IMG/VR virus record: IMGVR_UViG_3300044731_002337
Span: 230,774-294,773 of that record
Reading direction: 5' to 3' (one strand)
DNA: 64,000 nucleotides
The position numbers were made by a program, and so were the translations under genes. Below the pieces are notes generated by a model. It saw nothing but the letters and a program-made list of their open reading frames with translations. It did no database searches and had not been told where the DNA came from. Position 1 is the first letter of the stretch, and each line of letters opens with the position of its first letter. Positions 34,749 through 58,159 of the stretch are shown here, in pieces.

Positions 34749-34780
34749 ATTGACAAGATGAAGAAAAAAAGTAAACAACT

Positions 34781-39985: not shown

Positions 39986-40003
39986 TTTATTTGTTTGTTT
40001 GGA

Positions 40004-41068: not shown

Positions 41069-41104
41069 GTCCTGTCCTCTTCTTTTTCTATTTCCTTTTA
41101 TTTT

Positions 41105-42235
41105 TTATTTCTTCATTTCCATTTTTTTTTGTGTTTGACAAGCACATACTTGCGAATAATAACGTGGTAGAATGACCCATACAAGAATACCCCAAAGCAA
41201 TAGTAAACCAATAACTAATAGTGTCATCCATGTATAACTAGCATGCCATCCAGAGAATACATGATTGGTGACAGTAGGTGAAATATGTCGTGTTAGTAGT
41301 ACTGAAGGTGTCCATTCTAAATCGACCTGTATTGGATAATGATCTGAAAGGGTATTTTCTATGGTCCAGGTATGATGTAATAATCCAATGGGAGTTTGAT
41401 AAGGTGGAACTTGGGGAATGATAATGGTTTGTGATAGATGTATGGGTTGGAACTCATTGGTGAGTAAAAGGGCATAATCAATCCATTCTTGTGGACAGCA
41501 AGGACATTGATGCATAGACCAATATTCATCAACACATCCATGAGGGTATTGAGCATTGGTATAATATTCAATATTATCTAACCCTACTAAAGGATTTTTA
41601 GTTGGATCCATGGTAAATTCTTGGGTTGATGATGATGATGATGATGATAAGGGTATATTGGTAGCTTGAAGGATTTGTAAGACATGTTGATTTTGGGAAT
41701 TGGGAATATTAAAGTCGCCAATAATCAATGTAGGCTCATGGGGAGGAATATGATGCTGATCAATAAAGTGATGCAATTGTTGGAGCTGTTCAAGACGAAT
41801 CGAATGGGCAGTTGGAGTTTGCCATGCATGCAAATGTGTCATAAATAGATGAACTGAAGTAGATGAATGAACATCCAATTGTACATACAACATATTCTTA
41901 TCTGCTAAACAATCTGAGCCTTCACAATCAGTACGATAAGAAATATCATTGGTCGCAAGAATAGGGTGTTTACTATATACGGTAATACCAGCACGAACAA
42001 TGTTGATATTGATACGTTGTTCGGTAAAGTGTGAGAAGCCTAAAGAGATCAAGGTTTTACGAAGTTCTAATTCTAAATGAATGGGGATAAGTTCTGCAAA
42101 CATGAATACGTCAACCTCATGATGGTAAGAGGTAATCCATTTGGCAATTTGGGTGAGACGTTCTTCTTGGGCGATAAAACGTAAAGGTTTGGGAACTGGC
42201 ATCATGACATTGAGGAATACAATACGTAATTTCAT
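41105..42235 (-). CDS. EEP-family phosphodiesterase, sphingomyelinase C-like, with C-terminal TM
   Basis: FLNV, FAEL, YSKHPI, DCLADK, THLHA, GDFNI, WIDY, LSDHYPI, then a TM. Confidence 0.82.
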   Translation of the reverse strand: MKLRIVFLNVMMPVPKPLRFIAQEERLTQIAKWITSYHHEVDVFMFAELIPIHLELELRKTLISLGFSHFTEQRININIVRAGITVYSKHPILATNDISYRTDCEGSDCLADKNMLYVQLDVHSSTSVHLFMTHLHAWQTPTAHSIRLEQLQQLHHFIDQHHIPPHEPTLIIGDFNIPNSQNQHVLQILQATNIPLSSSSSSSTQEFTMDPTKNPLVGLDNIEYYTNAQYPHGCVDEYWSMHQCPCCPQEWIDYALLLTNEFQPIHLSQTIIIPQVPPYQTPIGLLHHTWTIENTLSDHYPIQVDLEWTPSVLLTRHISPTVTNHVFSGWHASYTWMTLLVIGLLLLWGILVWVILPRYYSQVCACQTQKKMEMKK

Positions 42236-42306
42236 AATGGATTATGTTCTTCTTTTTTTTTTCATGAGTTCAAGTGAAAAACAAGGGGGGTAATGGTAAT
42301 ATAAAA

Positions 42307-42867
42307 ATGGCATGTGATGAAATATTGCGCGTGATAAAGGGGAATATGAAAAAGGTGGATTTATTACCACGTATGTATAGTGAAGTGGATTGTCAAGGGG
42401 ATATGATAAGTGTATGTCATGGACGTCATTCTATTCCATTCCCTATCAAATCCATGATTGTACCTATTACGTGTACATTGCAGTTTGTGGATTCAGAACA
42501 TCGATGGGATTCAGAGTATGATCATGAGTTACATGGAGAAATGATTCGTGATGTGGAAGAAGTTATTGAACAATGGTATAATGAGGCCAGAACAAGGAAA
42601 TTTTATCAGAGTTGGTCTGAAGCGGATGTAGTGATGGTTGAAAAGGATAAAGTCATGTCCTATTATGATCAAGTGAAAAAGAAATGTCAAGAAACCAAGG
42701 ATGATGAATGGTGTCAATATGTGACGGGTGATGATAATGAATATAAGGGTTCATTTTGGGAATGGATTGTTGTCATGATGTGTTTACTCGTCATTATTAT
42801 AATTTTTTGGTACCTATGGAATAAAAAAATAGATGAGCAGCAACAATTACGGGAAACAATACATTAA
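42307..42867 (+). CDS. small Cys-containing membrane protein related to the A16/G9/J5-like paralogs
   Basis: PRMYSEVDCQG...PIKSMIVP shared with 14321-15682 and 23986-25959; C-terminal TM. Confidence 0.65.
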   Translation: MACDEILRVIKGNMKKVDLLPRMYSEVDCQGDMISVCHGRHSIPFPIKSMIVPITCTLQFVDSEHRWDSEYDHELHGEMIRDVEEVIEQWYNEARTRKFYQSWSEADVVMVEKDKVMSYYDQVKKKCQETKDDEWCQYVTGDDNEYKGSFWEWIVVMMCLLVIIIIFWYLWNKKIDEQQQLRETIH

Positions 42868-43495
42868 TGGATTTCATTATTTCATGGAGGTTCGATATAT
42901 GAATCGTCCATTTAGTGAGCAACGTGATGCATGGATGGCTTTATCTGAAGAAAAGAAACAGGAATTGGATGGTATTGCATTTAGGTCCCAGTATCAACAA
43001 TCAGGAAATAATGTAGACATGGAGGAGACTAATGAGGCCAAGGGTATTACTAAAAAATATGATACAGGATATAATGTGTTTTGTGCCGAATTAACTAAAA
43101 AAACGAGTTACATTACAAAAGAGCAGTGGGATGGTTTGCGTGATGAGCAGAGACAGACATTGCAAGGGCTGATAGGGCAAGAATTGGAGAATGTCGGATT
43201 GGAGGAATTAAATACTATGATAGGGACTTGTTTGTCGAGTCGATGGAGTGAACGTCAAAAGAAGATGTTTCGAGAGATGGTACCTTCCATGACAGCTTCC
43301 AATATGGCGCAAAAGAATAAAGAAGCTGGTGAATTGTGGAAATCATTACCCGTAGAAAAGAAGAATCATTATGCTCGTATTGCTTATCTAAGTAAAATCA
43401 AATTTGTAGACCAATTGAAAAAAAGAAAACCTCCCAAGAAACACCGTGAAGCGTTATCTGATTTGTCGGATAAGATGACTCAATTAGAAGTATAA
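42833..43495 (+). CDS. HMG-box protein
   Basis: NGFHYFM...AWMALSEEKKQ and TGYNVFC...KEAGELWKSLPVEKKNHY. Confidence 0.75.
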   Translation: MSSNNYGKQYINGFHYFMEVRYMNRPFSEQRDAWMALSEEKKQELDGIAFRSQYQQSGNNVDMEETNEAKGITKKYDTGYNVFCAELTKKTSYITKEQWDGLRDEQRQTLQGLIGQELENVGLEELNTMIGTCLSSRWSERQKKMFREMVPSMTASNMAQKNKEAGELWKSLPVEKKNHYARIAYLSKIKFVDQLKKRKPPKKHREALSDLSDKMTQLEV

Positions 43496-43511
43496 TAATA
43501 AAAAAAGAAAG

Positions 43512-44165
43512 ATGTTTATTGGTATTGATTATTCACCTCTTTGTGTAGCCTTAGTAACTCGTGATGATCGTAGTGGTGAATTTTATAGTCAAGTAGCCTA
43601 TTATCATGGGGTACATGGACAGAGACAAGAATTGGTATACCCTAATTGGAAGATTACCGTTCATCGATTTCGACAGAATCAAGATGACATTGCTCATTAT
43701 CAACATATCAAACAATTTGTGATCAATGTGATTCGTCGTTGGAAGGAACGTTATGATGAGGGGGGAGAAGGAGGAGGTGAACCGATTGGATTGGAAGATA
43801 ATTTACATCACTATACAGGTTCGAATCAATTTGCACAAATGGCAGAGATTAAAGCGATTCTAGCCTTGGCATTTCGTGAATTGAATTGGAATTATATGTT
43901 GATTAGTGCGACATCAGCACGGGCTATGTGGATACGTATGCCACCTTCTATTCGACATGAATGGTCAAGACGTAATCAGTTGACAACAAAACGTCGTTTA
44001 TTGGAATTATTTCAGATTCGAAATCATTTTCGGTTTCCATCTCATCAACATCCTTATAGTGATATTATTGATGCCTATGTACAACATCAAGCAGTTTCGA
44101 CAAGACCTGTAGCTCCACCACGTCGTAATAAGTATGCAACTCGACTACTACGTGATTTCCTATGA
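43512..44165 (+). CDS. RuvC-like Holliday junction resolvase
   Basis: MFIGIDYS, IGLED, TTK, SDIIDAY acidic residues in RuvC order. Confidence 0.75.
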   Translation: MFIGIDYSPLCVALVTRDDRSGEFYSQVAYYHGVHGQRQELVYPNWKITVHRFRQNQDDIAHYQHIKQFVINVIRRWKERYDEGGEGGGEPIGLEDNLHHYTGSNQFAQMAEIKAILALAFRELNWNYMLISATSARAMWIRMPPSIRHEWSRRNQLTTKRRLLELFQIRNHFRFPSHQHPYSDIIDAYVQHQAVSTRPVAPPRRNKYATRLLRDFL

Positions 44166-44723
44166 TTGATGAGTCGCGATAATTTGGTCAATACGCTGTT
44201 GAGTATGTTGTAAGTATTGTCGTGCATCAAATTTGCGACACTTGTGAAGGATTTGGAGAAAGTGTTCTTGGGCTCGTGCGTACACAATGTCTTGAAAGGG
44301 TTTGAATGCGTGTACATCATCGGTACCACAATATTGTAAAATGGTTTCTTTAAAATCGGTAAGGTACTTGACAGCAAGTCGAAAATGTTGATACGCGATA
44401 TCTAGACTCTTTTGAGTAGGAAATGTTTCCTTAGTTAGAATACCACGTTCAATGGTAAGCATGTTATCCAAATACACTACTAATTGTTCATAATAAAAAG
44501 GGTTCAATTTAGACCAATGTTCCATGACTTTGAGGGCTTGAACAAGGTCATAATCTTGATAGATAGCATCCATATCAGGAATACTGAGTTGAATGGGCTT
44601 ACGTGTTTTGTAAGTAATGAGACGACTTGCTAATCCAGCAGCACTTAAACCAGCTGCTACAACTGCTAAATTTTTACCTTGTGAATATAAATCTTCTTTA
44701 GAAAGTGGGATATTGAACTGCAT
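44160..44723 (-). CDS. hypothetical protein with N-terminal hydrophobic helix
   Basis: ORF with A-tract leader. Confidence 0.65.
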   Translation of the reverse strand: MQFNIPLSKEDLYSQGKNLAVVAAGLSAAGLASRLITYKTRKPIQLSIPDMDAIYQDYDLVQALKVMEHWSKLNPFYYEQLVVYLDNMLTIERGILTKETFPTQKSLDIAYQHFRLAVKYLTDFKETILQYCGTDDVHAFKPFQDIVYARAQEHFLQILHKCRKFDARQYLQHTQQRIDQIIATHQS

Positions 44724-44857
44724 TTCTCTCCCTTTTTTTTGGTGAGTAGTTTTTTCAGATCATGTTTCTTGTTCTGTATTTTTTTTTTGAGTTTAAGGTA
44801 TTACTAGGAAAGGGTAAGAGGTAATTTATGGAAGGATAAATAAAAAAAAAAATACAT

Positions 44858-45409
44858 ATGTATGCAGGTGATCCTGGATATTTTGAGTATGATGACAAGT
44901 ATGCACCATTATGTGTGAAAACAGCTCGTCCTACAGGCCATGTTCCTGATATTGTACCCATTTTACAATCTTATTATAATGATACCTATTCTTATGGACA
45001 AAAACATGCATGGGCAATTCAACCATCAGGAATATCTGCGGCAGAAGCAGCTTTTTTATTGATGAAGGGGAGAATGACCAAGACTCCAACGCCATATCGA
45101 AAGAAACCACAACGAAATATGGTATGTATTACCGAACAAGAAGTGTTACATTGTTCCATCGAGGTTGTAAAATTATATAAACAAATGTTACAAATTGATG
45201 ATAACCATGCGAGTATTTTGCAGCATGTATTGCAGTTACCAAGTTATTATTGTAATGATATTGTTCCTCGTATCACGCAGCAGGTAAAGCAATTTTTGAA
45301 ACAGTATCAGTTAACGGCTCGTCAATATACCAAGGTATTGAAAGTGGCTCAACCTCAATTGTCACGAATCATTGCGCGGTATTATCAGGAACGAAAGGCT
45401 AAAGGGTGA
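44858..45409 (+). CDS. hypothetical protein
   Basis: ORF with A-tract leader. Confidence 0.65.
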   Translation: MYAGDPGYFEYDDKYAPLCVKTARPTGHVPDIVPILQSYYNDTYSYGQKHAWAIQPSGISAAEAAFLLMKGRMTKTPTPYRKKPQRNMVCITEQEVLHCSIEVVKLYKQMLQIDDNHASILQHVLQLPSYYCNDIVPRITQQVKQFLKQYQLTARQYTKVLKVAQPQLSRIIARYYQERKAKG

Positions 45410-45900
45410 GTGTAAAATAGGAAAAGGTAGATGATGGTTGCATGTCTCCAATGTAATTGTTGTTGAGGTTGTACAAAGAGATAGTGCGGTAAATGATGGA
45501 GTCCAAGTGGATGTAATGGGTGTTGGGTTATGTATATACTCCATATCACAAATAAAACTCGAAGTGGGTAATCAAGCCATAATAATATGAAAATGATCCA
45601 TGGTAAATAATGGAATTGAGTGAACTTGGGGAAGAATAAGAACCAACGATGTCCAATTCCCGGTAATGGATAAAAGGGTTTATGTAGTTGTGGTGTTGGA
45701 CGGAATAAGTATCGATGTTGCCAGGTTAGGTAGTTGATAGTCCATGGTAAAAGACATGTGGCGATCACAAAAGAGATGGATACATTAGGATGATAAATGA
45801 TCCAATAGAGAAGACGAAGTTGACTAACTAAAATAATATAGGGCCGGAAAGTATAATATTCCGATTGTCTCCTAAGGGGTAACTGAATGTGAGAATACAT
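45385..45900 (-). CDS. hydrophobic multi-TM hypothetical protein
   Basis: Aromatic and hydrophobic ORF filling the gap; head-to-head with the primase gene. Confidence 0.5.
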   Translation of the reverse strand: MYSHIQLPLRRQSEYYTFRPYIILVSQLRLLYWIIYHPNVSISFVIATCLLPWTINYLTWQHRYLFRPTPQLHKPFYPLPGIGHRWFLFFPKFTQFHYLPWIIFILLWLDYPLRVLFVIWSIYITQHPLHPLGLHHLPHYLFVQPQQQLHWRHATIIYLFLFYTHPLAFRS

Positions 45901-45915
45901 TTTTGGAAAAAAGAA

Positions 45916-47430
45916 ATGGAAGAGCAATATAAACCTTTTTCAATTCGGGAATCTCAAAACTTAAAGTCATTGGCATTTTTCAAACAACGTAATTGGGCAT
46001 TAACTACTGTGGACTTGAATGAGAATCGTTTATATTCGAATTTGAAATCATTATGCCCTTATCCACGATTCACTCAAATTTGTGGTGGCCATAATATTTA
46101 CTTTCCTTATGCAGAGAGATTCAATGTATTGGCCATGATTGCTTCGGATTTGAAACAAGAAAAGTTTGGTTATTTCAATCAGATTGCGTACAATGCACCT
46201 GGAGAAGGTTTTCGATTGGTCATTGATTTGGATGCGGAGAATCGGGTCTTGACACCACCTGAATTAGTGAAAATTACTGGCTTATTGGATAAGGTCTTGT
46301 GCAAGTATTATGCTGGACAAGCTTCTATCCCAATCTTTGTATCTACTTCGGGTCCCAAGTGGAAGAATGGTTCGGAATGCTTATCGGTGCATATGGTGGC
46401 CCATGTTCAAGTCTCATTTATGGAAGCTAAGCAATTGATTTATAGTTATCGTACCTTGATGACCTCGGAGGAAGGCGTGGACATGAGGGGATTAACCTTG
46501 GATGATGCTATTTACAAGGATAAGAGTAGCAAGACCATTTATGAATCGTGCAACCTGCGTATGATTTATTCTTACAAGAAGGAAAAGTGTATCAATCCGG
46601 AGGAAAATCATCAGAATTGTATGATGTGTATGGGAAGTGGTAGTTTGACAGTGACCAAGTTTTATGTCCCTAAATTTGTCATGTGGAATGGGAAATTGGA
46701 TACGGAATTGTTCAAGACGACACATGGAGATTTTGTTCAAGTGTTTCGGAATCATGGTCTATGGGTGGAGGCTGATCATGATGTAATGCAAGGGTATGCG
46801 ATTCCTCATGGCACCTTATCCTATGAGAATGAAGCCTCGTTTGAAGAAGATATTGTGCAAGGCAAGGTGAAGTCACGTAAGAGGAAACGAAGATATGATG
46901 AACAGCCTATTAGTGATACAAGCATGGTGAAACGTTTTCAATGTGCATTACGTCAGATTACGGATCATGGGGTTAAACCTTTCCCTCATATTAGGGTTAG
47001 ACATATGACTGAATATAAGTCGACGACGATTCATACTGTAACGATTTATGTCGTGGGAGAAGGAGCAGGCAATTGCTTGTATACCAAGGTGGATCATGGT
47101 GAAGGGCGAATCTTTTTTGAATATGATGTCAAGAATGTCAAGCTCAAATTGGGATGTTTTTCCGAAAAGAAGGCAACTTGTGCTCAATGGAAGGATAAGA
47201 AGTCGTGTATTGAATTTCCAATTGAGCCTTGGGTATTTACTGGAACTGATCCAAAACAATTACCTGAAGGAACTCACAATGCTGAAATTACGAGTCTAGT
47301 GACTAGGGCGCGTTATGCCATGACACAACAATTACCACCCGATACCAGTTTGTCTACCTTGATGAGACTCACATTTCAAAACCCTCATTGCCAATTCATC
47401 ATTTCATCACCGCAACTCTCATCCCAATAA
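45916..47430 (+). CDS. archaeo-eukaryotic primase (PrimPol/herpes-NCLDV type) with C-terminal Zn-binding region
   Basis: FRLVIDLD (DxD), SVHMV, DDAIYK...NLRMIYSYK, C-terminal C..H..C..C (CLY...DH...GCFS...C). Confidence 0.8.
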   Translation: MEEQYKPFSIRESQNLKSLAFFKQRNWALTTVDLNENRLYSNLKSLCPYPRFTQICGGHNIYFPYAERFNVLAMIASDLKQEKFGYFNQIAYNAPGEGFRLVIDLDAENRVLTPPELVKITGLLDKVLCKYYAGQASIPIFVSTSGPKWKNGSECLSVHMVAHVQVSFMEAKQLIYSYRTLMTSEEGVDMRGLTLDDAIYKDKSSKTIYESCNLRMIYSYKKEKCINPEENHQNCMMCMGSGSLTVTKFYVPKFVMWNGKLDTELFKTTHGDFVQVFRNHGLWVEADHDVMQGYAIPHGTLSYENEASFEEDIVQGKVKSRKRKRRYDEQPISDTSMVKRFQCALRQITDHGVKPFPHIRVRHMTEYKSTTIHTVTIYVVGEGAGNCLYTKVDHGEGRIFFEYDVKNVKLKLGCFSEKKATCAQWKDKKSCIEFPIEPWVFTGTDPKQLPEGTHNAEITSLVTRARYAMTQQLPPDTSLSTLMRLTFQNPHCQFIISSPQLSSQ

Positions 47431-47473
47431 AAATAAACATAATTACAAAAAAAAAAAAGAAAACAAGGAAGAA

Positions 47474-48484
47474 ATGTCTGATGTTTATTTATTACCATTA
47501 CGTTTAAATTTGGAGGAAGCTCCTTTTCCTACTATTATTTTTATGGGCAAGAGAAATTCAGGGAAGAGTTCTGGAATGAAGGCCGTATCCAAAATGTTGA
47601 ACAAGTATAAAGTATGTGTTTGGTCAGGAAATAGAGAGACTAGAAATAATTGGGCCAAATGTTTAGATAGTCGAGCTACTGTATTTGGAGCAGATAAACA
47701 TGGTGTATCCAAATTGAAATCGATTATAGAATACAATCAAAGTAAAGTTGATGAATATGATATTTTGAATAAGGGGGAGTTACCGGCGAAATATCATTGT
47801 CTATTTATCTTTGATGATGTTACGGGTACAAGGGCATTTCGAAGTGCTGAATTTATGGAAGATTTGTTTTCAAATGGTCGACATTATTATATTGCGATTA
47901 TCATTGCGACACAACATGTCAGACATTTACCACCTAGTGTTCGTAGTAATGCGGATTATATCTTTTTATATCATTTAAATAAGAGACCTTTAGAACAAAT
48001 ACATGATGAGTTGATTGAAGAGCCAGACGATAAACATGCCTTTATTGATTTAGTTCGACAAGTTACAGGTAAGAAGGATCCAGCTACAGGTAAACGAATT
48101 CGGTATTCCATAGTATATGATAACGTCAATTGCCATGATGACTTGTCTGAGCAGTTTAGTATTTTTTGGTCCGGTCCTAAGAAATATTTTGAGAATTTGA
48201 AATTAGGTCATCCTAAATGGAGGGAATGGAATAAGAAACATTTTATAGATATAGGTAAACAAGCTATCTTGAAAAAAGCACGTGTCAAGGAACAAAAGAA
48301 GAGATTAGCGTCTCATTATGTACCACAGTTTGCCCATTTACGTATGGATCATGATTATTATGTACCACCACAAGAAGGAGAAGAGTTGGAAGGTGAAGGT
48401 GAAGGATATGAAACACATCACATCTCTACCAAAAAAACTAGTTTACGTTTACATATGCCCAAAGTTATGATGGTAGCTGAATAA
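47474..48484 (+). CDS. A32-like virion packaging ATPase
   Basis: IIFMGKRNSGKS, LFIFDDV, FSNGRHY, ATQH..LPPSVRSNADY. Confidence 0.93.
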   Translation: MSDVYLLPLRLNLEEAPFPTIIFMGKRNSGKSSGMKAVSKMLNKYKVCVWSGNRETRNNWAKCLDSRATVFGADKHGVSKLKSIIEYNQSKVDEYDILNKGELPAKYHCLFIFDDVTGTRAFRSAEFMEDLFSNGRHYYIAIIIATQHVRHLPPSVRSNADYIFLYHLNKRPLEQIHDELIEEPDDKHAFIDLVRQVTGKKDPATGKRIRYSIVYDNVNCHDDLSEQFSIFWSGPKKYFENLKLGHPKWREWNKKHFIDIGKQAILKKARVKEQKKRLASHYVPQFAHLRMDHDYYVPPQEGEELEGEGEGYETHHISTKKTSLRLHMPKVMMVAE

Positions 48485-48550
48485 ACGCATCTAGATAATG
48501 AAAAAAAAAATCAAATGTAAAGGAAAGAAGAAAAAAAATAAATAATAGAG

Positions 48551-49903
48551 ATGAGTAGTAGTTGGTCACAAGATGTTATTGGTCTTTATGAAGATAGTGA
48601 ACGACTAGTAGTCGAAGTGGAAGACATTATTGAAGGAGTAGATATTCCAGAAAGGACTGAAGGAAAACATGAAAATGAAGAAGAAGAAGAAGAAGAAGAA
48701 AATGAATCAATAACTATTTTATCACATCATGTAGATGAATATATATATGATGAGGATGTACCAGGTGATGGTCATGAATTTTGTTTAAAAAGTATTCCTA
48801 GTGAAGTATCCTCCTTAGTGTATGTGGTGGCAAATCATGAACATTCCTTTGTACCTACCATGATGCTTTCAAATCGTCCTGGTCGTAAAGTATATGTTGG
48901 ACGTAATGAGTTGGTGTTAGTGACTGGCCATAATCAACATTTAGCCATGACACAAGATAATCAATTCCTTATTGCCCGTGAAATACAGATTCTGCGTGAT
49001 TTGATTGGGGTCGATCATGTCATGCAGATTAAACAAGCCATAATGTTTGATAACCCTGAATATTTTGGGTTTATTACGCCGTATTATCGTGGAGTTAATG
49101 CGACGAAAGCGATTCAGGGTAATTTATATTTGATTAGTAAGTTTATGAAACAGTTATTGGGGGCGGTAGCAGATATCCATGAGCGAGGTATTGTTCATCG
49201 AGACTTGTGTTTTGAAAATGTGGTGTGGAATCCATTACGTGAAGAATTGACTATCATTGATTTTGATTTGGCTGTACCATTACGTAAAGAGGGGTATTAT
49301 ATTCGAGCTGGGCGTGAAAACTATGATGCTCCAGAAAAGACGAAAGCCATGGACTATTTTGGGAATAGGGTAGAATGGAATTCAGAATCACCCAAAGTGC
49401 CACCTTATAATGAATTGGTCGATGAATATGCTTGTGGTATCATGCTATGGATGTTACTAAGTGAATCCACTGATGCCCCATCACATGCGGATATCAAGAA
49501 ATGGTATCAAAAAGTGCAACGAAAGAAACTAGATAAGAAAGACCCTGAAATTCATTTTACCATGGGATTGTTAGCCACATTACCTAGCAATCGAACATCA
49601 GCCCGTAATGCCTTGAATCATCCATTCTTAACCGATACAGAACCTGATAAAGCCTATATCGATTTTCGTGCAGAGATGGATGAATTCGTACATGAACAAG
49701 AAGAAGAAGAAGAAGAAGAAGAGGAGGAGGATACCGCAGATGATGAGGATGATGAGGATCCTGAATGTGAACCAGAGAAAGAAGAAGAAGTGGCAAAGGA
49801 AGATGGGGATGATGATGATCCAGAGAAAGAAGTGGTAAACAAAGAACTTGAAGATGAGGATGAGGATGAGGATGATTTGGTGATTGAAGAAATTGTGGAG
49901 TGA
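48551..49903 (+). CDS. Ser/Thr protein kinase-like protein with acidic termini
   Basis: REIQIL, VHRDLCFENVV, IIDFDLA, YDAPE, DEYACG, RTSARNALNHPF. Confidence 0.85.
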   Translation: MSSSWSQDVIGLYEDSERLVVEVEDIIEGVDIPERTEGKHENEEEEEEEENESITILSHHVDEYIYDEDVPGDGHEFCLKSIPSEVSSLVYVVANHEHSFVPTMMLSNRPGRKVYVGRNELVLVTGHNQHLAMTQDNQFLIAREIQILRDLIGVDHVMQIKQAIMFDNPEYFGFITPYYRGVNATKAIQGNLYLISKFMKQLLGAVADIHERGIVHRDLCFENVVWNPLREELTIIDFDLAVPLRKEGYYIRAGRENYDAPEKTKAMDYFGNRVEWNSESPKVPPYNELVDEYACGIMLWMLLSESTDAPSHADIKKWYQKVQRKKLDKKDPEIHFTMGLLATLPSNRTSARNALNHPFLTDTEPDKAYIDFRAEMDEFVHEQEEEEEEEEEEDTADDEDDEDPECEPEKEEEVAKEDGDDDDPEKEVVNKELEDEDEDEDDLVIEEIVE

Positions 49904-49946
49904 GTTTGTAATGCAGGCTATATGGACAAAAATTGGGATAAATAAA

Positions 49947-50564
49947 ATGGAGGATTTAGTACATGCGTTATCGAATGTGATTAATGTGGAGGAAGTGAAT
50001 CGTCGTCGTATTGCTGAGGAATTAGTGTTATCTTTAGTGAAACGAATGAATATGGCTGATTTTTGTTACACTGTACAGCCATGGTTTGGATTTTCATCAG
50101 CTGAGTTATCTGAGTTGGATGGTATTGAACATAAACGTGTAGAAAAGTTGTTCCGAAGATATCAAAAGTACAAGAAGCCTTATGTGACGTGGTGGTTCTT
50201 AGGGTATTTCAGACACATGTCCCCTGAACAATTGGGAGATTTCATTTCTCAAGTCATGGAGGAAGATATTGATGAACTTGATATTACCCATTTCCTCACC
50301 CGTTTCAAATCATTCGATGCTTCCCATTTTGATGAAAGTAAATTATTTCGGTATGACAAGAACTGGTATCGTGTCACATTCCGTAACATTCAATGGGATG
50401 ATTCTACCACCTTGAACCTTACATGTGAAGTCAAGTTGACCGACGAGGAAGTTCATGCTTTGGGTGTCAACCTATGTAAACCCATTCTCTTCAACCCACG
50501 TAATCGTGAACTGAATCGTAAATTGGTAGACTATCATCTCGCCAAAGCTGGTGTAGCTTCATGA
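49947..50564 (+). CDS. hypothetical protein
   Basis: ORF; start could also be 49911. Confidence 0.65.
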   Translation: MEDLVHALSNVINVEEVNRRRIAEELVLSLVKRMNMADFCYTVQPWFGFSSAELSELDGIEHKRVEKLFRRYQKYKKPYVTWWFLGYFRHMSPEQLGDFISQVMEEDIDELDITHFLTRFKSFDASHFDESKLFRYDKNWYRVTFRNIQWDDSTTLNLTCEVKLTDEEVHALGVNLCKPILFNPRNRELNRKLVDYHLAKAGVAS

Positions 50565-50656
50565 GGCAATAAAACTTTTCAAAAATAACAAACATGATTC
50601 TGACTCAAAAAGCATAGAAGAAAAAGAAGAAAGTAAAAAAAGAAAACGAAACGTAA

Positions 50657-51184
50657 ATGTCTTATGCATTGTTTAATGGTGTATGGGTATTAGATAAGAG
50701 TAGGAATTCCAATTTAAGCCCTCTATTAGAAGCTATGGGTAGAAGTCGTTTTGAAGTGAGTTGTGTTTCTTCAGCAGATGAAATTTTTACATTAGAGTTA
50801 ATAACACCTAAACATGGCCATAAAGATGCGATTACGTTTCATAAAAAGGTGGAAATTTATTTACAAGATACCGTATTGAAATTGTTCGCCATGTTTAAGC
50901 CCAGTATCACCCGAATCAAGTATGAAAATCAATTCTTGTGTGATGGTGTATCACGAGATCATCCGAATGATTCCAAATCGTTTGGTTCATGTAATGCAGT
51001 ATGTTATATTACAGCAGATAATCATATTATTATTCGATGGTATATGAATGATAAACGTCGCATTATGATATCAGATCATTTCATTCATTCCGATGGAAAT
51101 CTCATTGTGGATATTTCTATTTCTCATCAAGGGAAAAGCACAATCGAGGTCCAATCTAGAAAAGTATACATAAAGAAAAATTAG
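50657..51184 (+). CDS. FABP/calycin-like beta-barrel protein
   Basis: FNGVWVLDKSRNSNLSPLLEAMG (FxGxWxL..S.N....L.ALG) and terminal RKVYIKK. Confidence 0.6.
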   Translation: MSYALFNGVWVLDKSRNSNLSPLLEAMGRSRFEVSCVSSADEIFTLELITPKHGHKDAITFHKKVEIYLQDTVLKLFAMFKPSITRIKYENQFLCDGVSRDHPNDSKSFGSCNAVCYITADNHIIIRWYMNDKRRIMISDHFIHSDGNLIVDISISHQGKSTIEVQSRKVYIKKN

Positions 51185-51192
51185 AATCTATA

Positions 51193-51786
51193 ATGGAGAA
51201 GAAGATTCGTAAGAAGAAGCAAATTGAGGAGGGGGGAATGGTAGATTTAGGTGTTTTTACACAATCGCCATTAGCCAAGAAAACCAAAGTCGCAACCCAA
51301 AAAAATCAAAACAAGAAGAAGAAGAATGATGAAAGGTTTTACATGTTTAAAAAATTTGCCAAGGATGTATTTAATGACCCTTTGACCTTGGAAGATTTTC
51401 AACGTTGGTCACCCTACTTTAAGGCCACAATGACCTTGGCTGAATATAAGAGATTGCAAGGTCAAGTTGATATATCCATGATTGAATATGTATCTCTATT
51501 AAGTGCCAAACATCGTAATGTCTCCCATAAAGAGGATATGGAAGGTATTAATGAGAGTGGTTTAATGGCTATAACGGATTTTATTCATTGTACGGAATAC
51601 ATGGCCAAATGGCAAGTAGATTGGTTAGTGAAATTAGGATGGACTACTGATACGACAGGCTATAGTATTAATACGGTTTCATTCAGTTCTGCAGAATTAA
51701 TGACTTCAGGTGTGGAATGGCTTGGTATGGTCATCAAATTATCGTGTCGCATGATAGAGTTTGCTTCACCATTATCACCAGTATGA
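51193..51786 (+). CDS. hypothetical protein with basic N-terminus
   Basis: ORF; convergent overlap with the next gene. Confidence 0.6.
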   Translation: MEKKIRKKKQIEEGGMVDLGVFTQSPLAKKTKVATQKNQNKKKKNDERFYMFKKFAKDVFNDPLTLEDFQRWSPYFKATMTLAEYKRLQGQVDISMIEYVSLLSAKHRNVSHKEDMEGINESGLMAITDFIHCTEYMAKWQVDWLVKLGWTTDTTGYSINTVSFSSAELMTSGVEWLGMVIKLSCRMIEFASPLSPV

Positions 51787-52880
51787 TCATAATAACCCAT
51801 TACATGTAAAGGCCTTCGAATGTGATGTTCATCTAATAATTGTTCACGATAACGAATCATTTCAGTAAATTCTTTGCAAAAGTCTTGTACTACATAGATA
51901 CGTCCTTTCTTATGTTTTGGATGAACATTCAATAAAAACATGTGTTCCACTTGATATCCGTATTGTTGTAACATCCATTTAAGACCTGATTGTTGGATAC
52001 CATACGTATTGATCTTATTATTAGTAATATGTCCACATGGCCCATATCCATGAGTCACATTCCAGAAACTAGTATAATCAATATTATCGCATCGCTTCAA
52101 GTCAATAATGGATAGCAATTTAGGGTTTGATTTGTTTTGGAGAATAATATCTGGAGATCCGGCCAATAATGCTGGTGGATAACATAAAGGCTGCTCTGTC
52201 CAAAATATATCCCAATCCCAAAACTTTTTATCCTCATAAATCTTTAAAAATTGCTCAACACACACCTTATTCTCCGGATGAATGGTCTGTTGCTCAAATG
52301 GTATACCATTCAAAAATAACTCAATATTACGATGAAATTCAGTACCTAGATCTCTTGCTTCATCCCATTTAGCTTGAATATCCTCCACACATAAACAATT
52401 GTAATACTTATAACTTGGTTGATTCACACGTGTCGCATGAGACTTACTGTTAATCATTCGTTCTGATTCTTTGGTCGCATTAAACCCTGTGAAAAAACAA
52501 CTAATAAATTTAGTCAGCGAAATCACATTTTGAGAGGACCCATAAATATAATAACTATGACCTTCAGCTACAAATAATACAGCATCTTGCATGGGGTGAT
52601 AATTCTTTCGATTCCAGTAACGATGTGGTAATTGTCGATCCGCATAAATGAGTTGCTTCATATGTTCCACTGAAATATCTGGTGGATAAACTTCTTTTGT
52701 ACATAACAATGTTGCTGTTGACACCATCAATGAAGTTGGTTCGACAAATGGTTCACTACGTTGGAAATTATAGAGTGGAATGATGGGTGCTGGTGCTGTT
52801 ACTGCGGTTTTTGTTGTCTCCGTTTCATCCTCTTCCACTTCCATTTCATTAAGTTCAGTAATATCAATAGTAGTAGTCAT
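51660..52880 (-). CDS. PD-(D/E)XK exonuclease (RecB/Cas4/YqaJ-like)
   Basis: GTEFHRNIE, TEQ, AGSPDII, IIDLKR, YGIQ. Confidence 0.85.
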   Translation of the reverse strand: MTTTIDITELNEMEVEEDETETTKTAVTAPAPIIPLYNFQRSEPFVEPTSLMVSTATLLCTKEVYPPDISVEHMKQLIYADRQLPHRYWNRKNYHPMQDAVLFVAEGHSYYIYGSSQNVISLTKFISCFFTGFNATKESERMINSKSHATRVNQPSYKYYNCLCVEDIQAKWDEARDLGTEFHRNIELFLNGIPFEQQTIHPENKVCVEQFLKIYEDKKFWDWDIFWTEQPLCYPPALLAGSPDIILQNKSNPKLLSIIDLKRCDNIDYTSFWNVTHGYGPCGHITNNKINTYGIQQSGLKWMLQQYGYQVEHMFLLNVHPKHKKGRIYVVQDFCKEFTEMIRYREQLLDEHHIRRPLHVMGYYDHTGDNGEANSIMRHDNLMTIPSHSTPEVINSAELNETVLIL

Positions 52881-53023
52881 TGATTAGTAACTCTTTTTTT
52901 GTTATTATCTTATCTCAGTACTATCCCAATTCATTAAACCCATTCTGATCATGATGAGGAAAACAAGTAATAATTAAGGAATCAAAATAACAGAAAAAAA
53001 AAAGAAATAATACGAAAAAAAGT

Positions 53024-53257
53024 ATGAATGCACATGATGAGGCAGTCATTGAATATATCAAATCGGATCAGCCCAATGCATATACCATTATTCCATGGTC
53101 TAATGTGACTGTAGGTGAATACGCTAATCAATTAATTGCCTTTCACATATTACGCAAGAAGAATTTATTCATGGTACCAAATATGAAACCCAAACTTCGA
53201 TCAACTCGACAACGTCATAAAAATAAAGAAGTCATCAAAAAAAGAACTCCATCATGA
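53024..53257 (+). CDS. small hypothetical protein
   Basis: A-tract leader; ATGA overlap with the next gene. Confidence 0.6.
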   Translation: MNAHDEAVIEYIKSDQPNAYTIIPWSNVTVGEYANQLIAFHILRKKNLFMVPNMKPKLRSTRQRHKNKEVIKKRTPS

Positions 53258-53937
53258 ATCATCAAAGTTTTTTATGTGAACGCTTAACTGCTTCCTTACG
53301 ATTAACTTTTATTAAATTAGATAGTCAACTCAAACAATTTATCATTATGAGAAAATGTGAAATTACACCACAAAAGATTATCCAATTATTATCAACCAAC
53401 TTTTCTGCCCTCTATTTAACAATCATTTATCCTGGACATATCCAATGTAGTAGCGATTTCCAAAACTTTAGTTGGCATGCCAATTTTCAAATCGATCTCA
53501 ATACTGATTTTTGGGCCTTGTGTTGGTCCACTTTTATTGATCGAATTTCCATGGAACCACATATCCTGATTGATAATGTTTCACATGGAAATCGTGTTCT
53601 TGAATTATGGATTCAATCGATTATGGATCGTTTTTGGGGCCATGTTAAATTTCCAAGTCAATCAGAGGATAGGAATCGTCGTCACCATAAGTATAATGAT
53701 TCCTCATCCTCTTCTTCCTCCTCTTCTTCTGCAACAAGTGAGGATGAAAATGATGAGGTGGAGGAGGATAATCATATGGTACAGCATATGAATCCATTTC
53801 GTGTAACAATACCTCAATCACAACCGCCAATGAACAACAACAACAATAAGAAAAAGAGAGGAAGAAGAGTAGAAAAGAAAAAAAGAGATCCTTCCACTTC
53901 TCCATCCTCCTCTTCCTTTGATTCAGATGTTTCGTAA
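53254..53937 (+). CDS. hypothetical protein with low-complexity C-terminus
   Basis: Poly-S, poly-N and basic tail. Confidence 0.6.
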   Translation: MNHQSFLCERLTASLRLTFIKLDSQLKQFIIMRKCEITPQKIIQLLSTNFSALYLTIIYPGHIQCSSDFQNFSWHANFQIDLNTDFWALCWSTFIDRISMEPHILIDNVSHGNRVLELWIQSIMDRFWGHVKFPSQSEDRNRRHHKYNDSSSSSSSSSSATSEDENDEVEEDNHMVQHMNPFRVTIPQSQPPMNNNNNKKKRGRRVEKKKRDPSTSPSSSSFDSDVS

Positions 53938-55363
53938 AACTAAACAGTACATTAGTTTTGGGTTATTTGGGTTTGGAATCTTATTAATGCTCATTGGAAT
54001 TATCATTATCACCGTCATGGATGTAAAGAATAATAATACGATTGCCCATGATATTACTTATTCTTTTGAAACACAAAGTACACCACCAGATCAGTTTAGT
54101 AAACCAACACCCAAAGCTGTAAGTGATTTTCGTTTAAGAGATGCATCTATCTCTACCTTGATGTATTATAATGATTTCTCCATTACTTCACCACCAGTAT
54201 GGAAATTAAATTACAATGATAGTGATGCTGATATTAAAGATATGGTAACCAAGAACATGGATAAGACTTTTTCATTTTCGAATTTCGTCTTTTGGTATCA
54301 TGATTCCACATTAAATTTATTATGTTCTTCCCCTGATGGATATAGTCGATTATCCAATGTACTCATAGGTGAATCAGAGGGCACCATGACTATAGTTCCT
54401 AAGCCTATGGACTTGAGTATTGTCTATTTACCTCAACGTAACATACAAGCCAATGTGACCAAAGTAGGTCGAGCTATCGCATTGAGTCATGATAATCAAC
54501 GACTCTATGTCTCCTATTACCCTACAGACAATATTGAAGGACGTGTCTACCATAAAGACCAAACAAGTAGTAACTTCCCTTCCACACCTTTACTCAATCT
54601 TAAACATAAATTATGTGGCGCCATCTCCATCTTCCATTGGAATGATATCAACTTGGAATGGACCTTACAAACTACAATACAACATCCTTTTGGTAGCCGT
54701 ATTGAGATCAACGGTCAATTCGATCATTTTGGAAAATTCATTACACCTTGGACCATGCGAAACTATGTCACACAACAAGACACCTACATGTTTACCACAT
54801 TTTCCATTGGCCATTCCAACCTACACTATTTTATTACCTACCAAGAAGATGGTACATTGTACAATTATTTCTCCACCTATTTACTCAATGTATCCCAATT
54901 GATTGTCGATGAGTCATGGTTATTTATCGCCTCTGAATCTAATGAAGTATATACCTATTCATGGAATCATAACTTGAAAACATGTACTGAAGTTCAACGT
55001 ATTTTATCGATAAGTAATCCTCCCATTTGCTATTGGAATAAAATATTATATATATACCCTAAAGTCTATGAGGTTGACAATGGAAAATGGACTGAAAATA
55101 CACAAAAAAAATTAACTACAAGTGATTCACGAACTATTAAACAGTTGGTTACAGATCCATTACATCAAATTGTGGTGGCTGTAGGAGCAACATTCTATAT
55201 TATTTTCCCTATTTCCATTATTACGCCTACGCCATTAATTCGTGAAGGATTACTCCAAGAACCTAAAGTAGTACAAGTTCAATTTGTATCCCAAACTAGT
55301 TTTGTCATTATCATGTCCACCGAATCTGCCTTTTATTGTGACGTCTATAAAACTTCCGAGTAA
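53927..55363 (+). CDS. type II membrane protein with predicted beta-propeller ectodomain
   Basis: N-terminal TM; VGRAIALSHDNQRLYVS, GAISIFHW, DHFGKFI FG-GAP-like segments. Confidence 0.6.
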   Translation: MFRKTKQYISFGLFGFGILLMLIGIIIITVMDVKNNNTIAHDITYSFETQSTPPDQFSKPTPKAVSDFRLRDASISTLMYYNDFSITSPPVWKLNYNDSDADIKDMVTKNMDKTFSFSNFVFWYHDSTLNLLCSSPDGYSRLSNVLIGESEGTMTIVPKPMDLSIVYLPQRNIQANVTKVGRAIALSHDNQRLYVSYYPTDNIEGRVYHKDQTSSNFPSTPLLNLKHKLCGAISIFHWNDINLEWTLQTTIQHPFGSRIEINGQFDHFGKFITPWTMRNYVTQQDTYMFTTFSIGHSNLHYFITYQEDGTLYNYFSTYLLNVSQLIVDESWLFIASESNEVYTYSWNHNLKTCTEVQRILSISNPPICYWNKILYIYPKVYEVDNGKWTENTQKKLTTSDSRTIKQLVTDPLHQIVVAVGATFYIIFPISIITPTPLIREGLLQEPKVVQVQFVSQTSFVIIMSTESAFYCDVYKTSE

Positions 55364-55405
55364 ACTAATAAAGAGAGAAGATTAAAAAAAAAAACAAAAA
55401 TTATC

Positions 55406-55864
55406 ATGGATGAGTTTGATAAGATCTTACATGAAGAAACTCGTGAGGTAGAGACAGCAAGTCATTCAGGGCATAGTCTTGTTCCTTTACCTGAACCTAT
55501 GAATTTACCTGAACCCCTGGTATTACCTTCACCACTTGTCGGTATTACCATGTATCAACATCATCATCATGAGTATACCTCCTCCTCCTCTTGTAGTAGT
55601 CGTTCCTTAGTAAGCAAAGAAGATGCTTTGAATTTTACGGCATGGTTATGTCCAGAGAGGGAAGAACCATGTCACCCTTTACCTGAGCGACCCACTGAAG
55701 AAATTCCCGGATCCATATTTACAGATACCGCACAATTTGATGCATGGAAGAGTCGCCGAATCATTCAAGAAGATGATGCAGCAGCAGATAAATTAGTGAA
55801 AGATGCGTTCATCCAAAAACTGAAACCACCACATTCGGGAATACCAAAAGAAGACTTGCCATGA
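55406..55864 (+). CDS. hypothetical protein
   Basis: A-tract leader; ATGA overlap with the next gene. Confidence 0.6.
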   Translation: MDEFDKILHEETREVETASHSGHSLVPLPEPMNLPEPLVLPSPLVGITMYQHHHHEYTSSSSCSSRSLVSKEDALNFTAWLCPEREEPCHPLPERPTEEIPGSIFTDTAQFDAWKSRRIIQEDDAAADKLVKDAFIQKLKPPHSGIPKEDLP

Positions 55865-56796
55865 AACAACATACAATACTCCAAGTGGATTCCTTTCTCT
55901 CCATGTTACAAGGATGTCTTTTATGGTCAGACACAGTACGAATTGAAATTGATGCCGAAGAACATATCTCACTTGACCTTTCTGATCCGGAAGGGCTAGG
56001 ATGCATATCATGTTTCTCCTCCATGGAACCCATGAACCATAACCATTCCATTTCCCACCTCTTCCTCATTGATCAACTCATTGACGCATTACAAATGATT
56101 AGTAAACATAATCATCAACACGGTGTCTATTTACAATTCTCCTCGGATCGAGCCAAGTTTATCAATCTACAACACGAATACATGACACAAGATATCCCCA
56201 TTTGCGATTATAGACCGCTTCATAAATTCCACCATATCGCTTTCCCCACCACAGATTATATCTCACTCCATTATCCCAGCGCTGAATGGAACCACATGAT
56301 TCAAACCTTTTGTATCTTTGCTGGAAGTCGTGGATCACCATTACAATATCACATGGACATTGATAAAGACAAGAGACTCATCACGTTACATCTACATATG
56401 ACTACTGATGCAGGACATAGTGTAGATATGAACATCAAATGTAAAGCTGCAAATGAAATTGGACGTAATCTAGGCACATCAGACATTCAAGTCGATGAAA
56501 TTCCATTTTCGTCTTGCACTTCTTCCTCTTTACATGGACAAGTTTGTTTACATAATTTACTTAATTCATGTCGCTTAACCACTACATCACCTCATTCTAC
56601 CCTACTATTTCATCGCACTGGTATCTATCAACAAATTACACCATTCACACCTCCACCCAAACCGGCATTCCCTTACCAAACTGGACAACAACGCAACAAA
56701 ACACAACATGGACCCAGACCCACCCCTGAATTCCCATACTACATCCACATGTTCTACGTCAGTGTACCCGATCTCGATCCTTCCTCATTCTCATAA
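55861..56796 (+). CDS. divergent PCNA-like sliding clamp
   Basis: Pattern recalls PCNA: FLSMLQG...VRIEID..ISLDLSD; IDQLIDALQMI; TDYISLHYPSAEWNHMI (cf. EYSCVVKMPSGEFARI). Confidence 0.5.
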   Translation: MKQHTILQVDSFLSMLQGCLLWSDTVRIEIDAEEHISLDLSDPEGLGCISCFSSMEPMNHNHSISHLFLIDQLIDALQMISKHNHQHGVYLQFSSDRAKFINLQHEYMTQDIPICDYRPLHKFHHIAFPTTDYISLHYPSAEWNHMIQTFCIFAGSRGSPLQYHMDIDKDKRLITLHLHMTTDAGHSVDMNIKCKAANEIGRNLGTSDIQVDEIPFSSCTSSSLHGQVCLHNLLNSCRLTTTSPHSTLLFHRTGIYQQITPFTPPPKPAFPYQTGQQRNKTQHGPRPTPEFPYYIHMFYVSVPDLDPSSFS

Positions 56797-58034: not shown

Positions 58035-58159
58035 CATCAAGGAGGTTACCTAAATTGCATCAAGGAGGTTACCTAAATTGCATCAAGGAGGTTACCTAAA
58101 TTGCATCAAGGAGGTTACCTAAATTGCATCAAGGAGGTTACCTAAATTGCATCAAGGAG
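58035..58159. repeat. perfect 23-bp tandem array (catcaaggaggttacctaaattg) x5 plus a 10-nt partial unit
   Basis: Units start at 58035, 58058, 58081, 58104, 58127 and 58150 (partial); no spacers. Confidence 0.97.

What the first reader, a model, noticed from the sequence alone, without database searches (positions are those of the whole stretch)
47000..56000. Orientation-independent GC-skew inversion, a candidate replication terminus or origin
Seen: before about 50 kb the + strand is G-rich in both + and - genes. Hand-counted, selected 60-nt lines: 13981 G20/C6 (+ gene) and 26341 G22/C3 (- gene). After about 54 kb it is C-rich in both: 63901 G2/C28 (+ gene) and 58861 G6/C14 (- gene). Protein composition flips accordingly: His/Thr/Pro/Gln-rich proteins are on the - strand early and on the + strand late. 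Inference: strong replichore-type asymmetry, implying a fixed origin with bidirectional replication. By the usual bacterial polarity a G-to-C switch marks a terminus.
Basis: partly seen in the sequence, partly recalled or inferred. Interest (0 to 1): 0.66.

Follow-up and report, generated by a model that had tools for sequence, protein, structure and literature searches.

The report
Replication-polarity switch in a giant virus
The G-rich-to-C-rich flip is real and independent of gene direction. It sits in a 295-kb contig of an uncultured giant virus, not a bacterium, and most likely marks where two oppositely replicated arms of the genome meet, at a strength not described for such viruses in the papers I could search.

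Summary
**Observation:** confirmed.
- At four-fold degenerate sites the position-linked GC skew of the + strand is +0.41 (95% 0.38-0.44) over 282 kb of the contig.
- It is -0.49 (-0.56 to -0.36) in the last 12 kb.
- Gene strand adds only about -0.12 in both regimes.
- The flip is centred at window ~51.8-51.9 kb and takes about 4 kb.

**What the contig is:** a 294,773-bp IMG/VR record with Nucleocytoviricota genes (PolB, RNA polymerase 1 and 2, A32 ATPase, D5-like helicase). It lacks a detectable capsid gene and VLTF3, and CheckV rates it 55% complete.

**Artefacts excluded:**
- A second assembly has the same structure.
- Five other lineages are colinear around the switch; four of them span it.
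- This rules out misassembly and recent inversion. The closest relative shares the skew strength.

**Best reading:** a replication-linked boundary between two genome arms. By the usual polarity it is a fork-convergence (terminus-type) point. An origin with reversed polarity remains a serious rival, because A, not T, accompanies G and the contig is incomplete.

The parts
1..46000 (.). Window part of the long arm (genome 1-282.5 kb) in which the + strand is G-rich whatever the gene strand
   Evidence: positional four-fold skew +0.41, with no gradient along 282 kb
46000..53250 (.). Transition zone of intermediate skew. The ML change point is at 51764 and the logistic centre at about 51.9 kb, with a 10-90% width of about 4.4 kb
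51193..51786 (+). 197-aa ORF from the six-frame ORF list. My greedy gene set dropped it because it overlaps the next gene by 127 nt. It is the last + ORF of the left arm. The L007, L008, L012 and L013 contigs match it by tblastx
51660..52880 (-). 406-aa gene of unknown function lying on the switch. It is conserved at about 60% identity in the relatives. Its four-fold skew is intermediate (-0.14)
   Evidence: No Pfam or PDB match. The AlphaFold2 model has mean pLDDT 38.8, too low to use
52881..53023 (.). AT-rich divergent intergenic region of 143 nt. It is the largest non-coding stretch in the transition zone and holds no iterons or long hairpins. The matching spacer in relatives is only 30-123 nt
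53024..53257 (+). Small conserved 77-aa ORF. The contig of the closest relative ends at the equivalent of its last codons
53254..64000 (.). Visible start of the second arm, where the + strand is C-rich whatever the gene strand. It holds 11 + genes and 2 - genes and runs to the end of the contig
   Evidence: positional four-fold skew -0.49; 12 of 12 genes negative
47474..48484 (+). A32-like packaging ATPase, a giant-virus hallmark gene 3.3 kb left of the switch and the anchor for the synteny comparison
   Evidence: Pox_A32, E 1.5e-08
58035..58159 (.). Perfect 23-bp x 5.4 tandem repeat in a convergent intergenic region. It belongs to a genome-wide repeat family and is not tied to the switch

Best explanation
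**What it is**
The switch is the boundary between two oppositely replicated arms of the genome of an uncultured giant virus (Nucleocytoviricota).

**How it works**
- A strand-asymmetric mutation pressure tied to the direction of fork movement enriches one strand in G, and slightly in A.
- The pressure reverses sign where the replication direction reverses.
- By the polarity known from bacteria and eukaryotic chromosomes (G-rich leading strand), forks converge here. That makes it a terminus-type point, not an origin.
- On this reading the contig holds one whole arm (at least 283-287 kb) and the first 12 kb of the other.

**Shown versus inferred**
- Shown: a positional, strand-independent skew that is stable over evolutionary time and flips within a few kb.
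- Inferred: the link to replication and the direction of the forks.
For: **Positional nature**
- The positional four-fold skew is +0.41 on the left and -0.49 on the right, with the same small coding-strand term on both sides. Intergenic DNA flips too.
- The profile is step-like, with no gradient over 282 kb. The transition is narrow, about 4.4 kb.

**Not an artefact or a rearrangement**
- A second assembly of 299,086 bp from another sample carries the first gene, PolB and the last gene. Its extra 4.3 kb lies entirely at the left end.
- Five relative lineages are colinear around the switch. Four of them (L008; L011; L012/L013; L014/L015/L016) span it. The contig of the closest relative (L007) ends about 1.5 kb past it.

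**Actively maintained**
- The closest relative (PolB 64% identical) has the same positional skew, 0.41-0.45. Synonymous sites are saturated at that distance, so the skew must be at equilibrium.

**Fits a mid-genome position**
- CheckV rates the contig 55% complete, which implies about 536 kb. The switch lies at 282.5 kb.
- MCP and VLTF3 are absent even at E<=10.

**Favours a sequence-independent convergence zone**
- No sizeable or conserved non-coding element lies at the switch.
Against: - The AT skew has the same sign as the GC skew (A>=T where G>C). This differs from the cytosine-deamination pattern (G>C with T>A) on which the polarity rule rests.
- Most coding sequence lies on the C-rich strand on both sides: 61% on the left and 88% on the right. 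Under the terminus reading these genes would be head-on to replication.
- Two assemblies end within about 4 nt of each other at the right end. The last 5 kb holds an ORFan, an ankyrin gene and a hydrolase gene, as near a real genome end. If the end is real, the second arm is only 12 kb long and an origin fits better.
- More distant relatives show only a weak positional component, about 0 to +0.05 on the left and -0.08 to -0.19 on the right.
- There are no read-depth data.
Confidence: 0.5

Rival explanations
1. The switch is a fixed internal origin of bidirectional replication, and in this virus the leading strand is the C-rich one, the reverse of the bacterial polarity.
For: - The transition is narrow, which is natural for a fixed start site.
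- Most coding sequence lies on the strand that would then be leading on both sides: 61% on the left and 88% on the right.
- A, not T, accompanies G, so the mutational cause is not the classical one and its polarity is unknown.
- Two assemblies stop at the same right end, and variable-type genes lie there. A short right arm would pose no problem for an origin.
- The mimivirus skew switch near 380 kb is read as an origin in the literature (PMC2211322, PMC6466248).
Against: - The sign change (G-rich to C-rich, read 5' to 3') is the opposite of that at every experimentally mapped origin class I know of. This rests on my own knowledge.
- No AT-rich non-coding region with repeats lies at the switch. 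Spacers are 143 nt here and 30-123 nt in relatives.
- Gene orientation does not flip at the switch. + genes flank it on both sides, and the cumulative CDS-skew minimum is at genome 217.7 kb.
Confidence: 0.27
2. A strand-specific process other than fork direction sets the skew and changes sign at this point. Candidates are a genome-length single-stranded intermediate, polar packaging or recombination, or strand-biased repair or modification.
For: - The composition pattern (G much greater than C, A slightly greater than T) is not the classical replication signature.
- The skew is about equal in all testable neighbour contexts.
- Giant-virus replication modes are poorly known, and most giant viruses show no such skew (PMC7290515, PMC5871332).
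Against: - No gradient runs along 282 kb, as would be expected if time spent single-stranded varied with position.
- No polar oligomers stand out beyond base composition.
- No known process of this kind produces a sign flip inside a colinear gene block.
Confidence: 0.12
3. A structural cause: a chimeric assembly, an inverted 12-kb segment, or a terminal inverted repeat whose partner lies at the other end of the genome.
For: - The contig is a metagenomic assembly. The contig of the closest relative ends about 1.5 kb past the switch.
- The reads could not be inspected.
Against: - An independent 299-kb assembly has the same structure.
- Four diverged lineages are colinear across the switch.
- Four-fold sites would re-equilibrate after an old inversion, yet the skew on the right is as strong as on the left.
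- No inverted copy of the last 24 kb exists elsewhere in the contig.
- A homogenised inverted repeat under a one-directional pressure would have a skew near zero, not -0.49. This last point is inference.
Confidence: 0.04
4. The skew simply follows gene orientation, through transcription-coupled or codon-usage bias.
For: - A coding-strand term does exist, about -0.12.
- It dominates in the more distant relatives, at -0.25 to -0.41.
Against: - + genes left of the switch and + genes right of it have opposite four-fold skew. The same holds for - genes and for intergenic DNA.
Confidence: 0.02

Closest known systems
GC-skew switch at the origin or terminus of bacterial chromosomes (replichores)
   Same: The skew is positional, independent of gene strand and step-like, and changes sign within a few kb.
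   Different: - The replicon is a giant-virus genome.
- A, not T, goes with G.
- Genes are not enriched on the G-rich strand.
- Only one switch is visible.
- No dif/Ter-like site and no KOPS-like polar oligomers were found.
Mimivirus compositional switch near 380 kb, read as a putative origin (PMC2211322; PMC6466248)
   Same: It is a giant virus with long segments of uniform strand asymmetry. The + strand goes from G+T-rich to C+A-rich at one point.
   Different: - In mimivirus the signal lies mainly in the AT skew and the CDS skew and tracks gene direction, with genes pointing outward from the point (PMC6466248).
- Here gene direction does not change at the switch. The GC skew at four-fold sites is 0.4-0.5 on both gene strands.
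Giant viruses reported to lack a replication-type skew: faustoviruses, ASFV and pacmanvirus (PMC7290515); Bodo saltans virus (PMC5871332)
   Same: Same phylum-level gene set: PolB, RNA polymerase and A32.
   Different: - In those genomes intergenic DNA is nearly unbiased and the skew follows gene strand, which is read as multiple or random origins.
- Here intergenic DNA has a skew of +0.22 on the left and -0.27 on the right.
Linear viral genomes replicated from their ends, such as adenovirus and poxvirus-type hairpin genomes. I cite this from my own knowledge and did not check it here.
   Same: In such genomes a G-to-C switch in mid-genome is where the two inward-moving replication fronts meet. 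This fits if the contig is about half a genome (CheckV 55%).
   Different: - Strand-displacement systems should give a gradient, not a plateau, and no gradient is seen here.
- No hairpin or inverted terminal repeat was seen.

Membership tests
Replichore boundary (replication-linked skew switch) | The sign of the GC skew changes independently of gene strand, including at synonymous sites and in intergenic DNA | tested here: met
Replichore boundary (replication-linked skew switch) | Roughly constant skew along each arm (a step profile) | tested here: met
   no trend across eleven 25-kb bins of the left arm. Only 12 kb of the right arm can be seen
Replichore boundary (replication-linked skew switch) | A second switch of opposite sign elsewhere on the replicon | tested here: inconclusive
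   None in 294,773 bp, and the skew is still strong at both contig ends. The contig is incomplete
Replichore boundary (replication-linked skew switch) | T>A accompanies G>C on the same strand (classical deamination signature) | tested here: not met
   four-fold AT skew is +0.10 and +0.03 on the left and +0.01 and -0.18 on the right (+ genes and - genes in each case), the same sign as the GC skew
Replichore boundary (replication-linked skew switch) | Read-depth gradient from origin to terminus in replicating populations | not testable with these tools
Replication terminus (fork convergence) | G-rich to C-rich change read 5' to 3' on one strand | tested here: met
   the cumulative skew maximum is at window 51763
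Replication terminus (fork convergence) | Genes mostly co-directional with the forks, so converging on the point | tested here: not met
   61% of coding sequence on the left and 88% on the right lies on the C-rich strand. There is no orientation change at the switch
Site-specific terminus (dif/Ter with polar motifs) | A conserved non-coding site at the switch and strand-polar oligomers pointing to it | tested here: not met
   (no element found). Spacers are short and of varying length, 30-143 nt, in relatives; no 6- to 8-mer is polar beyond base composition
Replication origin | AT-rich non-coding region with repeated binding sites at the switch | tested here: not met
   the only candidate is a 143-nt divergent promoter-like spacer without iterons
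Replication origin | C-rich to G-rich change read 5' to 3' | tested here: not met
   the change runs the other way
Terminal inverted repeat of a linear giant-virus genome | An inverted copy of the segment at the other end of the genome | tested here: not met
   no inverted match of the last 24 kb within the contig. The genes in the 4.3-kb left extension differ in size and type. The true left end is still unknown
Nucleocytoviricota (giant viruses) | Family B DNA polymerase, A32-type packaging ATPase, D5-like primase-helicase and multisubunit RNA polymerase | tested here: met
   The nearest Atlas clusters to PolB are Nucleocytoviricota
Nucleocytoviricota (giant viruses) | Double-jelly-roll major capsid protein and the VLTF3 transcription factor | tested here: not met
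   no match even at E<=10. The most likely reason is that the contig is incomplete (CheckV 55%), so this does not exclude membership

The most novel reading that the evidence does not exclude
A lineage of giant viruses replicates its several-hundred-kb genome by a rigid, bacterial-style programme with fixed start and end points. That programme imprints a position-linked GC skew of 0.4-0.5 at synonymous sites, with an unusual purine-type signature. On this reading the switch at window ~52 kb is either a defined origin with reversed polarity or a site-specific fork barrier, neither of which has been described in Nucleocytoviricota.
Probability: 0.3. Interest if true: 0.75.

Novelty: new variant of a known kind. 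Interest (0 to 1): 0.55.

Why it matters
- How giant viruses replicate their DNA is largely unknown: where they start, whether starts are fixed, and how forks end.
- Published skew analyses mostly find no replication signal (faustoviruses, Bodo saltans virus) or one that tracks gene direction (mimivirus).
- A lineage with a strong, gene-independent skew and a conserved switch gives a concrete, mappable landmark for replication direction in an uncultured virus.
- It makes origin-versus-terminus testable by read depth alone.
- It offers a natural system for asking which mutational process (G much greater than C, with A>=T) acts asymmetrically at a viral fork.
- Practically, it shows that the contig is probably one arm plus the start of the next. 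This helps in finishing the genome.

Tried and rejected
**Not possible**

**Searches that found nothing**
- tRNA and Rfam scans of the window: nothing.
- Inverted or direct copies of the last 24 kb elsewhere in the contig: none.
- Polar 6- to 8-mers beyond base composition on the left arm: none convincing.
- A neighbour-context signature at four-fold sites (APOBEC-like TC, or CpG): none. The test is limited by codon structure.

**Function of the 406-aa gene on the switch**
- No Pfam or PDB match.
- The AlphaFold2 model from five sequences has mean pLDDT 38.8, so I ran no fold search.
- My PD-(D/E)XK nuclease idea, based on the PDIIL...IIDLKRC motifs, remains untested.

**Attempts to extend the contig or find the missing part**
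- The last 34 nt and the repeat core gave no match in IMG/VR.
- Right-arm proteins found no IMG/VR relatives.
- The 478-aa ORF near the right end has no homologue.
- The genome search cannot draw relatives for a virus record, and the relative's record is not held.
- The DNA of the 299-kb sister assembly is not retrievable.

**Other**
- A literature search for the sample accessions returned nothing.
- The large representative protein search was not used, because no claim here rests on the absence of relatives. No genetic code other than table 11 was used.
Full report
**1.

- Over window 1-50000 the + strand has G 11905 / C 7249 (skew +0.243). Over 54000-64000 it has G 1423 / C 2238 (skew -0.223).
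- A 2-kb sliding profile stays between +0.08 and +0.43 up to about 51 kb. It is negative from about 52 kb to the end.

The decisive test is whether this follows gene strand. It does not.
- With a simple non-overlapping ORF set (258 genes, 90% coding), third-position skew in + strand terms on the left is +0.46 for + genes, +0.28 for - genes and +0.22 for intergenic DNA.
- On the right the values are -0.36, -0.62 and -0.27.
- At four-fold degenerate sites the values are +0.283 and +0.521 on the left and -0.622 and -0.366 on the right.
- 191 of 206 left genes are positive and 12 of 12 right genes are negative.

Splitting this into a positional term and a coding-strand term gives:
- positional +0.41 [0.38, 0.44] on the left and -0.49 [-0.56, -0.36] on the right;
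- coding-strand -0.11 and -0.13, so the same on both sides.

Only the positional term flips. Proteins encoded on the C-rich strand are richer in Thr, His, Pro, Gln and Ser. Those on the G-rich strand are richer in Gly, Glu, Val, Lys and Met.

**2. Where and how sharp**

- The cumulative-skew maximum and the two-regime ML change point fall at window 51763/51764, with 5-lnL support of 51642-52201.
- A logistic transition fitted to four-fold and intergenic G/C sites, with gene strand as a covariate, centres at 51.9 kb. Its scale is about 1 kb, which gives a 10-90% width of about 4.4 kb.
- A pure step is worse by 4.7 lnL, and a scale of 3 kb or more is worse by over 4 lnL.
- The flip therefore takes a few kb. 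That is under 2% of the length of the long arm.

The point lies where the 3' ends of a 197-aa + ORF (51193-51786) and a 406-aa - gene (51660-52880) overlap. The next non-coding stretch is a 143-nt AT-rich divergent spacer (52881-53023). It has no iterons, hairpins or tandem repeats of note.

**3. What the sequence is**

- The window is the last 64 kb of a single 294,773-bp contig, an IMG/VR virus record classed as linear and rated 55% complete by CheckV.
- It carries these genes:

| Gene | Position |
|---|---|
| Family B DNA polymerase | genome ~208-211 kb |
| RNA polymerase subunit 1 | genome ~166 kb |
| RNA polymerase subunit 2 | genome ~185 kb |
| A32-type packaging ATPase | window 47474-48484 |
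| D5-like primase-helicase | window 1104-3161 |
| SNF2 helicase, Ser/Thr kinases, ankyrin proteins | several |

- The nearest Atlas clusters to the polymerase are Nucleocytoviricota.
- There are no tRNAs and no Rfam matches in the window.
- It is therefore a giant-virus contig, not a bacterial chromosome.
- Two near-universal giant-virus genes, the major capsid protein and VLTF3, are not found even at E<=10. Together with the CheckV figure, this suggests that a large part of the genome is missing.

**4. The whole-contig picture**

- The + strand is G-rich from base 1 to 282.5 kb and C-rich only in the last 12 kb.
- Four-fold skew shows no trend along the long arm (eleven 25-kb bins).
- It is still strong in the very first genes and the very last genes. 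Neither contig end is close to another switch.

**5. Artefact and rearrangement are excluded**

- *Second assembly.* A contig of 299,086 bp from another sample carries the first gene, the polymerase and the last gene. Its extra ~4.3 kb lies at the left end, where it reads through a 27-bp tandem repeat into kinase paralogues. It ends within about 4 nt of our right end.
- *No inverted repeat.* The last 24 kb has no inverted or direct copy elsewhere in the contig.
- *Relatives.*
  - IMGVR_UViG_3300048686_001337 (147.5 kb; polymerase 64% and A32 70% identical) is colinear with window 37.7-53.25 kb. Its contig ends about 1.5 kb past the switch.
  - JACCDN010079702.1 (10.3 kb) is colinear with window 47.1-58.0 kb, right across the switch.
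  - Three further lineages also span it in the same gene order: JACCDN010680401.1; Ga0453068_0009877 with SRR27335579_921861; and SRR13490363_13141 with two ENA contigs.

A misassembly or a recent inversion in this contig is thus ruled out. An old inversion would have re-equilibrated at four-fold sites, yet the right-hand skew is as strong as the left.

**6. Is the skew itself conserved?**

- In the closest relative, yes. The positional four-fold skew is 0.41 around the polymerase and 0.45 around A32, in the same orientation relative to the genes.
- In the more distant short contigs, total GC skew also goes from slightly positive to clearly negative at the syntenic place.
- At four-fold sites, however, most of their bias is coding-strand-linked (about -0.25 to -0.41). 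The positional part is weak: about 0 to +0.05 on the left and -0.08 to -0.19 on the right, from small counts.
- The strong positional pressure is therefore a property of this virus and its nearest kin. It is weaker, but has the same sign pattern, further out.

**7. Mechanism**

A pressure that acts on one physical strand whatever the gene direction, stays constant over 282 kb, reverses within a few kb inside a colinear gene block, and persists over deep divergence is what fork-direction-linked mutation bias produces. I therefore read the switch as the boundary between two oppositely replicated arms. That reading is an inference.

*For convergence (terminus-type):*
- the G-to-C direction of the change, under the usual polarity;
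- the absence of any sizeable or conserved non-coding element at the switch, with spacers of 30-143 nt across relatives;
- the fact that 282.5 kb is about half of the ~536 kb implied by CheckV, with the capsid and VLTF3 genes missing.

*For an origin with reversed polarity:*
- a narrow transition is most natural for a fixed start;
- A, not T, accompanies G (averaged four-fold composition on the left is about G 0.25, C 0.10, A 0.35, T 0.30), so the classical cytosine-deamination logic behind the polarity rule does not apply cleanly;
- most coding sequence lies on the C-rich strand on both sides, 61% and 88%;
- two assemblies stop at the same right end next to ORFan, ankyrin and hydrolase genes, as near a true terminus.

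Against giving much weight to the gene-orientation argument: orientation does not change at the switch, and the cumulative CDS-skew minimum is at genome 217.7 kb.

My estimates are:

| Reading | Probability |
|---|---|
| Terminus-type | 0.50 |
| Origin | 0.27 |
| Non-replicative strand-specific process | 0.12 |
| Structural artefact | 0.04 |
| Gene-orientation effect | 0.02 |

**8. Comparison with what is known**

- Skew switches at origins and termini are textbook for bacteria.
- Among giant viruses, mimivirus has a compositional switch near 380 kb that is read as an origin. It lies mainly in the AT and CDS skews and tracks outward-pointing genes (PMC2211322, PMC6466248).
- Faustoviruses, ASFV and pacmanvirus show nearly unbiased intergenic DNA and skews driven by gene strand, which is read as multiple or random origins (PMC7290515).
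- Bodo saltans virus shows no central skew peak (PMC5871332).
- My searches of the open literature found no giant virus with a gene-independent skew of this strength. That is absence from a limited library, not proof of novelty.
- I class the finding as a new variant of a known kind.

**9. Limits**

- No reads could be examined.
- The contig is incomplete, and the DNA of the longer sister assembly could not be fetched.
- The lineage is sparsely sampled.
- The family-level placement and the host are unknown.
- Gene calls are my own simple ORF set.

Noticed in passing
window 289-341, 35703-35793, 58035-58159; also genome 1-113, 31795, 41584, 42214, 44528, 72828, 161884, 175315-175550, 219613: A family of perfect or near-perfect 23-27-bp tandem repeats shares the core TTCATTCGAAGAGGTAAC (or its complement) at 12 or more sites. 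Many have a 24-bp period and lie inside ORFs. The contig starts inside one array, and two other assemblies also break at or just before that array. The 18-mer has no exact match elsewhere in IMG/VR.
   Followed up: partly
G000:C1:143975-144631 (outside the window): A 650-bp AT-rich non-coding block of degenerate repeats of roughly 50 and 100 bp, the largest non-coding repeat region of the contig. There is no skew change there.
   Followed up: partly
window 59259-60695 (+): This 478-aa ORF has no homologue in the 5.8-billion-protein word search or in IMG/VR. Conserved synteny with relatives stops just before it, at the kinase gene 58152-59279.
   Followed up: partly
window 55861-56796 (+) versus L011 5566-6381 (-) and L012 6261-7082 (-): The homologue of this gene is inverted in two relatives, and there its four-fold skew is near zero. 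This is a natural test of position against orientation, but the counts are too small to use.
   Followed up: partly
L007 13011-14312 (-), between the homologues of window genes 48551-49903 and 49911-50564: The closest relative carries an extra 433-aa gene here that is absent from the window. Its contig ends at the equivalent of window 53257, just past the switch.
   Followed up: no
window 51660-52880 (-): The conserved 406-aa protein on the switch has motifs reminiscent of PD-(D/E)XK nucleases (PDIIL...IIDLKRC). Its C-terminus (SAELNETVLI) is conserved and is encoded in the 127-nt overlap with the convergent ORF. There is no database match, and the structure model is unusable.
   Followed up: partly
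G000:C1:10034-22060 (-) and the 4.3-kb left extension of the sister assembly: Two adjacent ORFs of about 2000 aa each sit at the left end; the first carries a faint DUF3638 hit. Beyond the contig's left end lies a cluster of Kdo/Pkinase-type kinase paralogues. A Peptidase_S74 protein and a T4-type RNA ligase lie in the first 8 kb.
   Followed up: no
whole contig: Proteins identical to those of this contig occur in assemblies of at least four samples (JGI 3300044731, 3300059473 and 3300037541, and run SRR27430816). The virus therefore recurs across samples.
   Followed up: no
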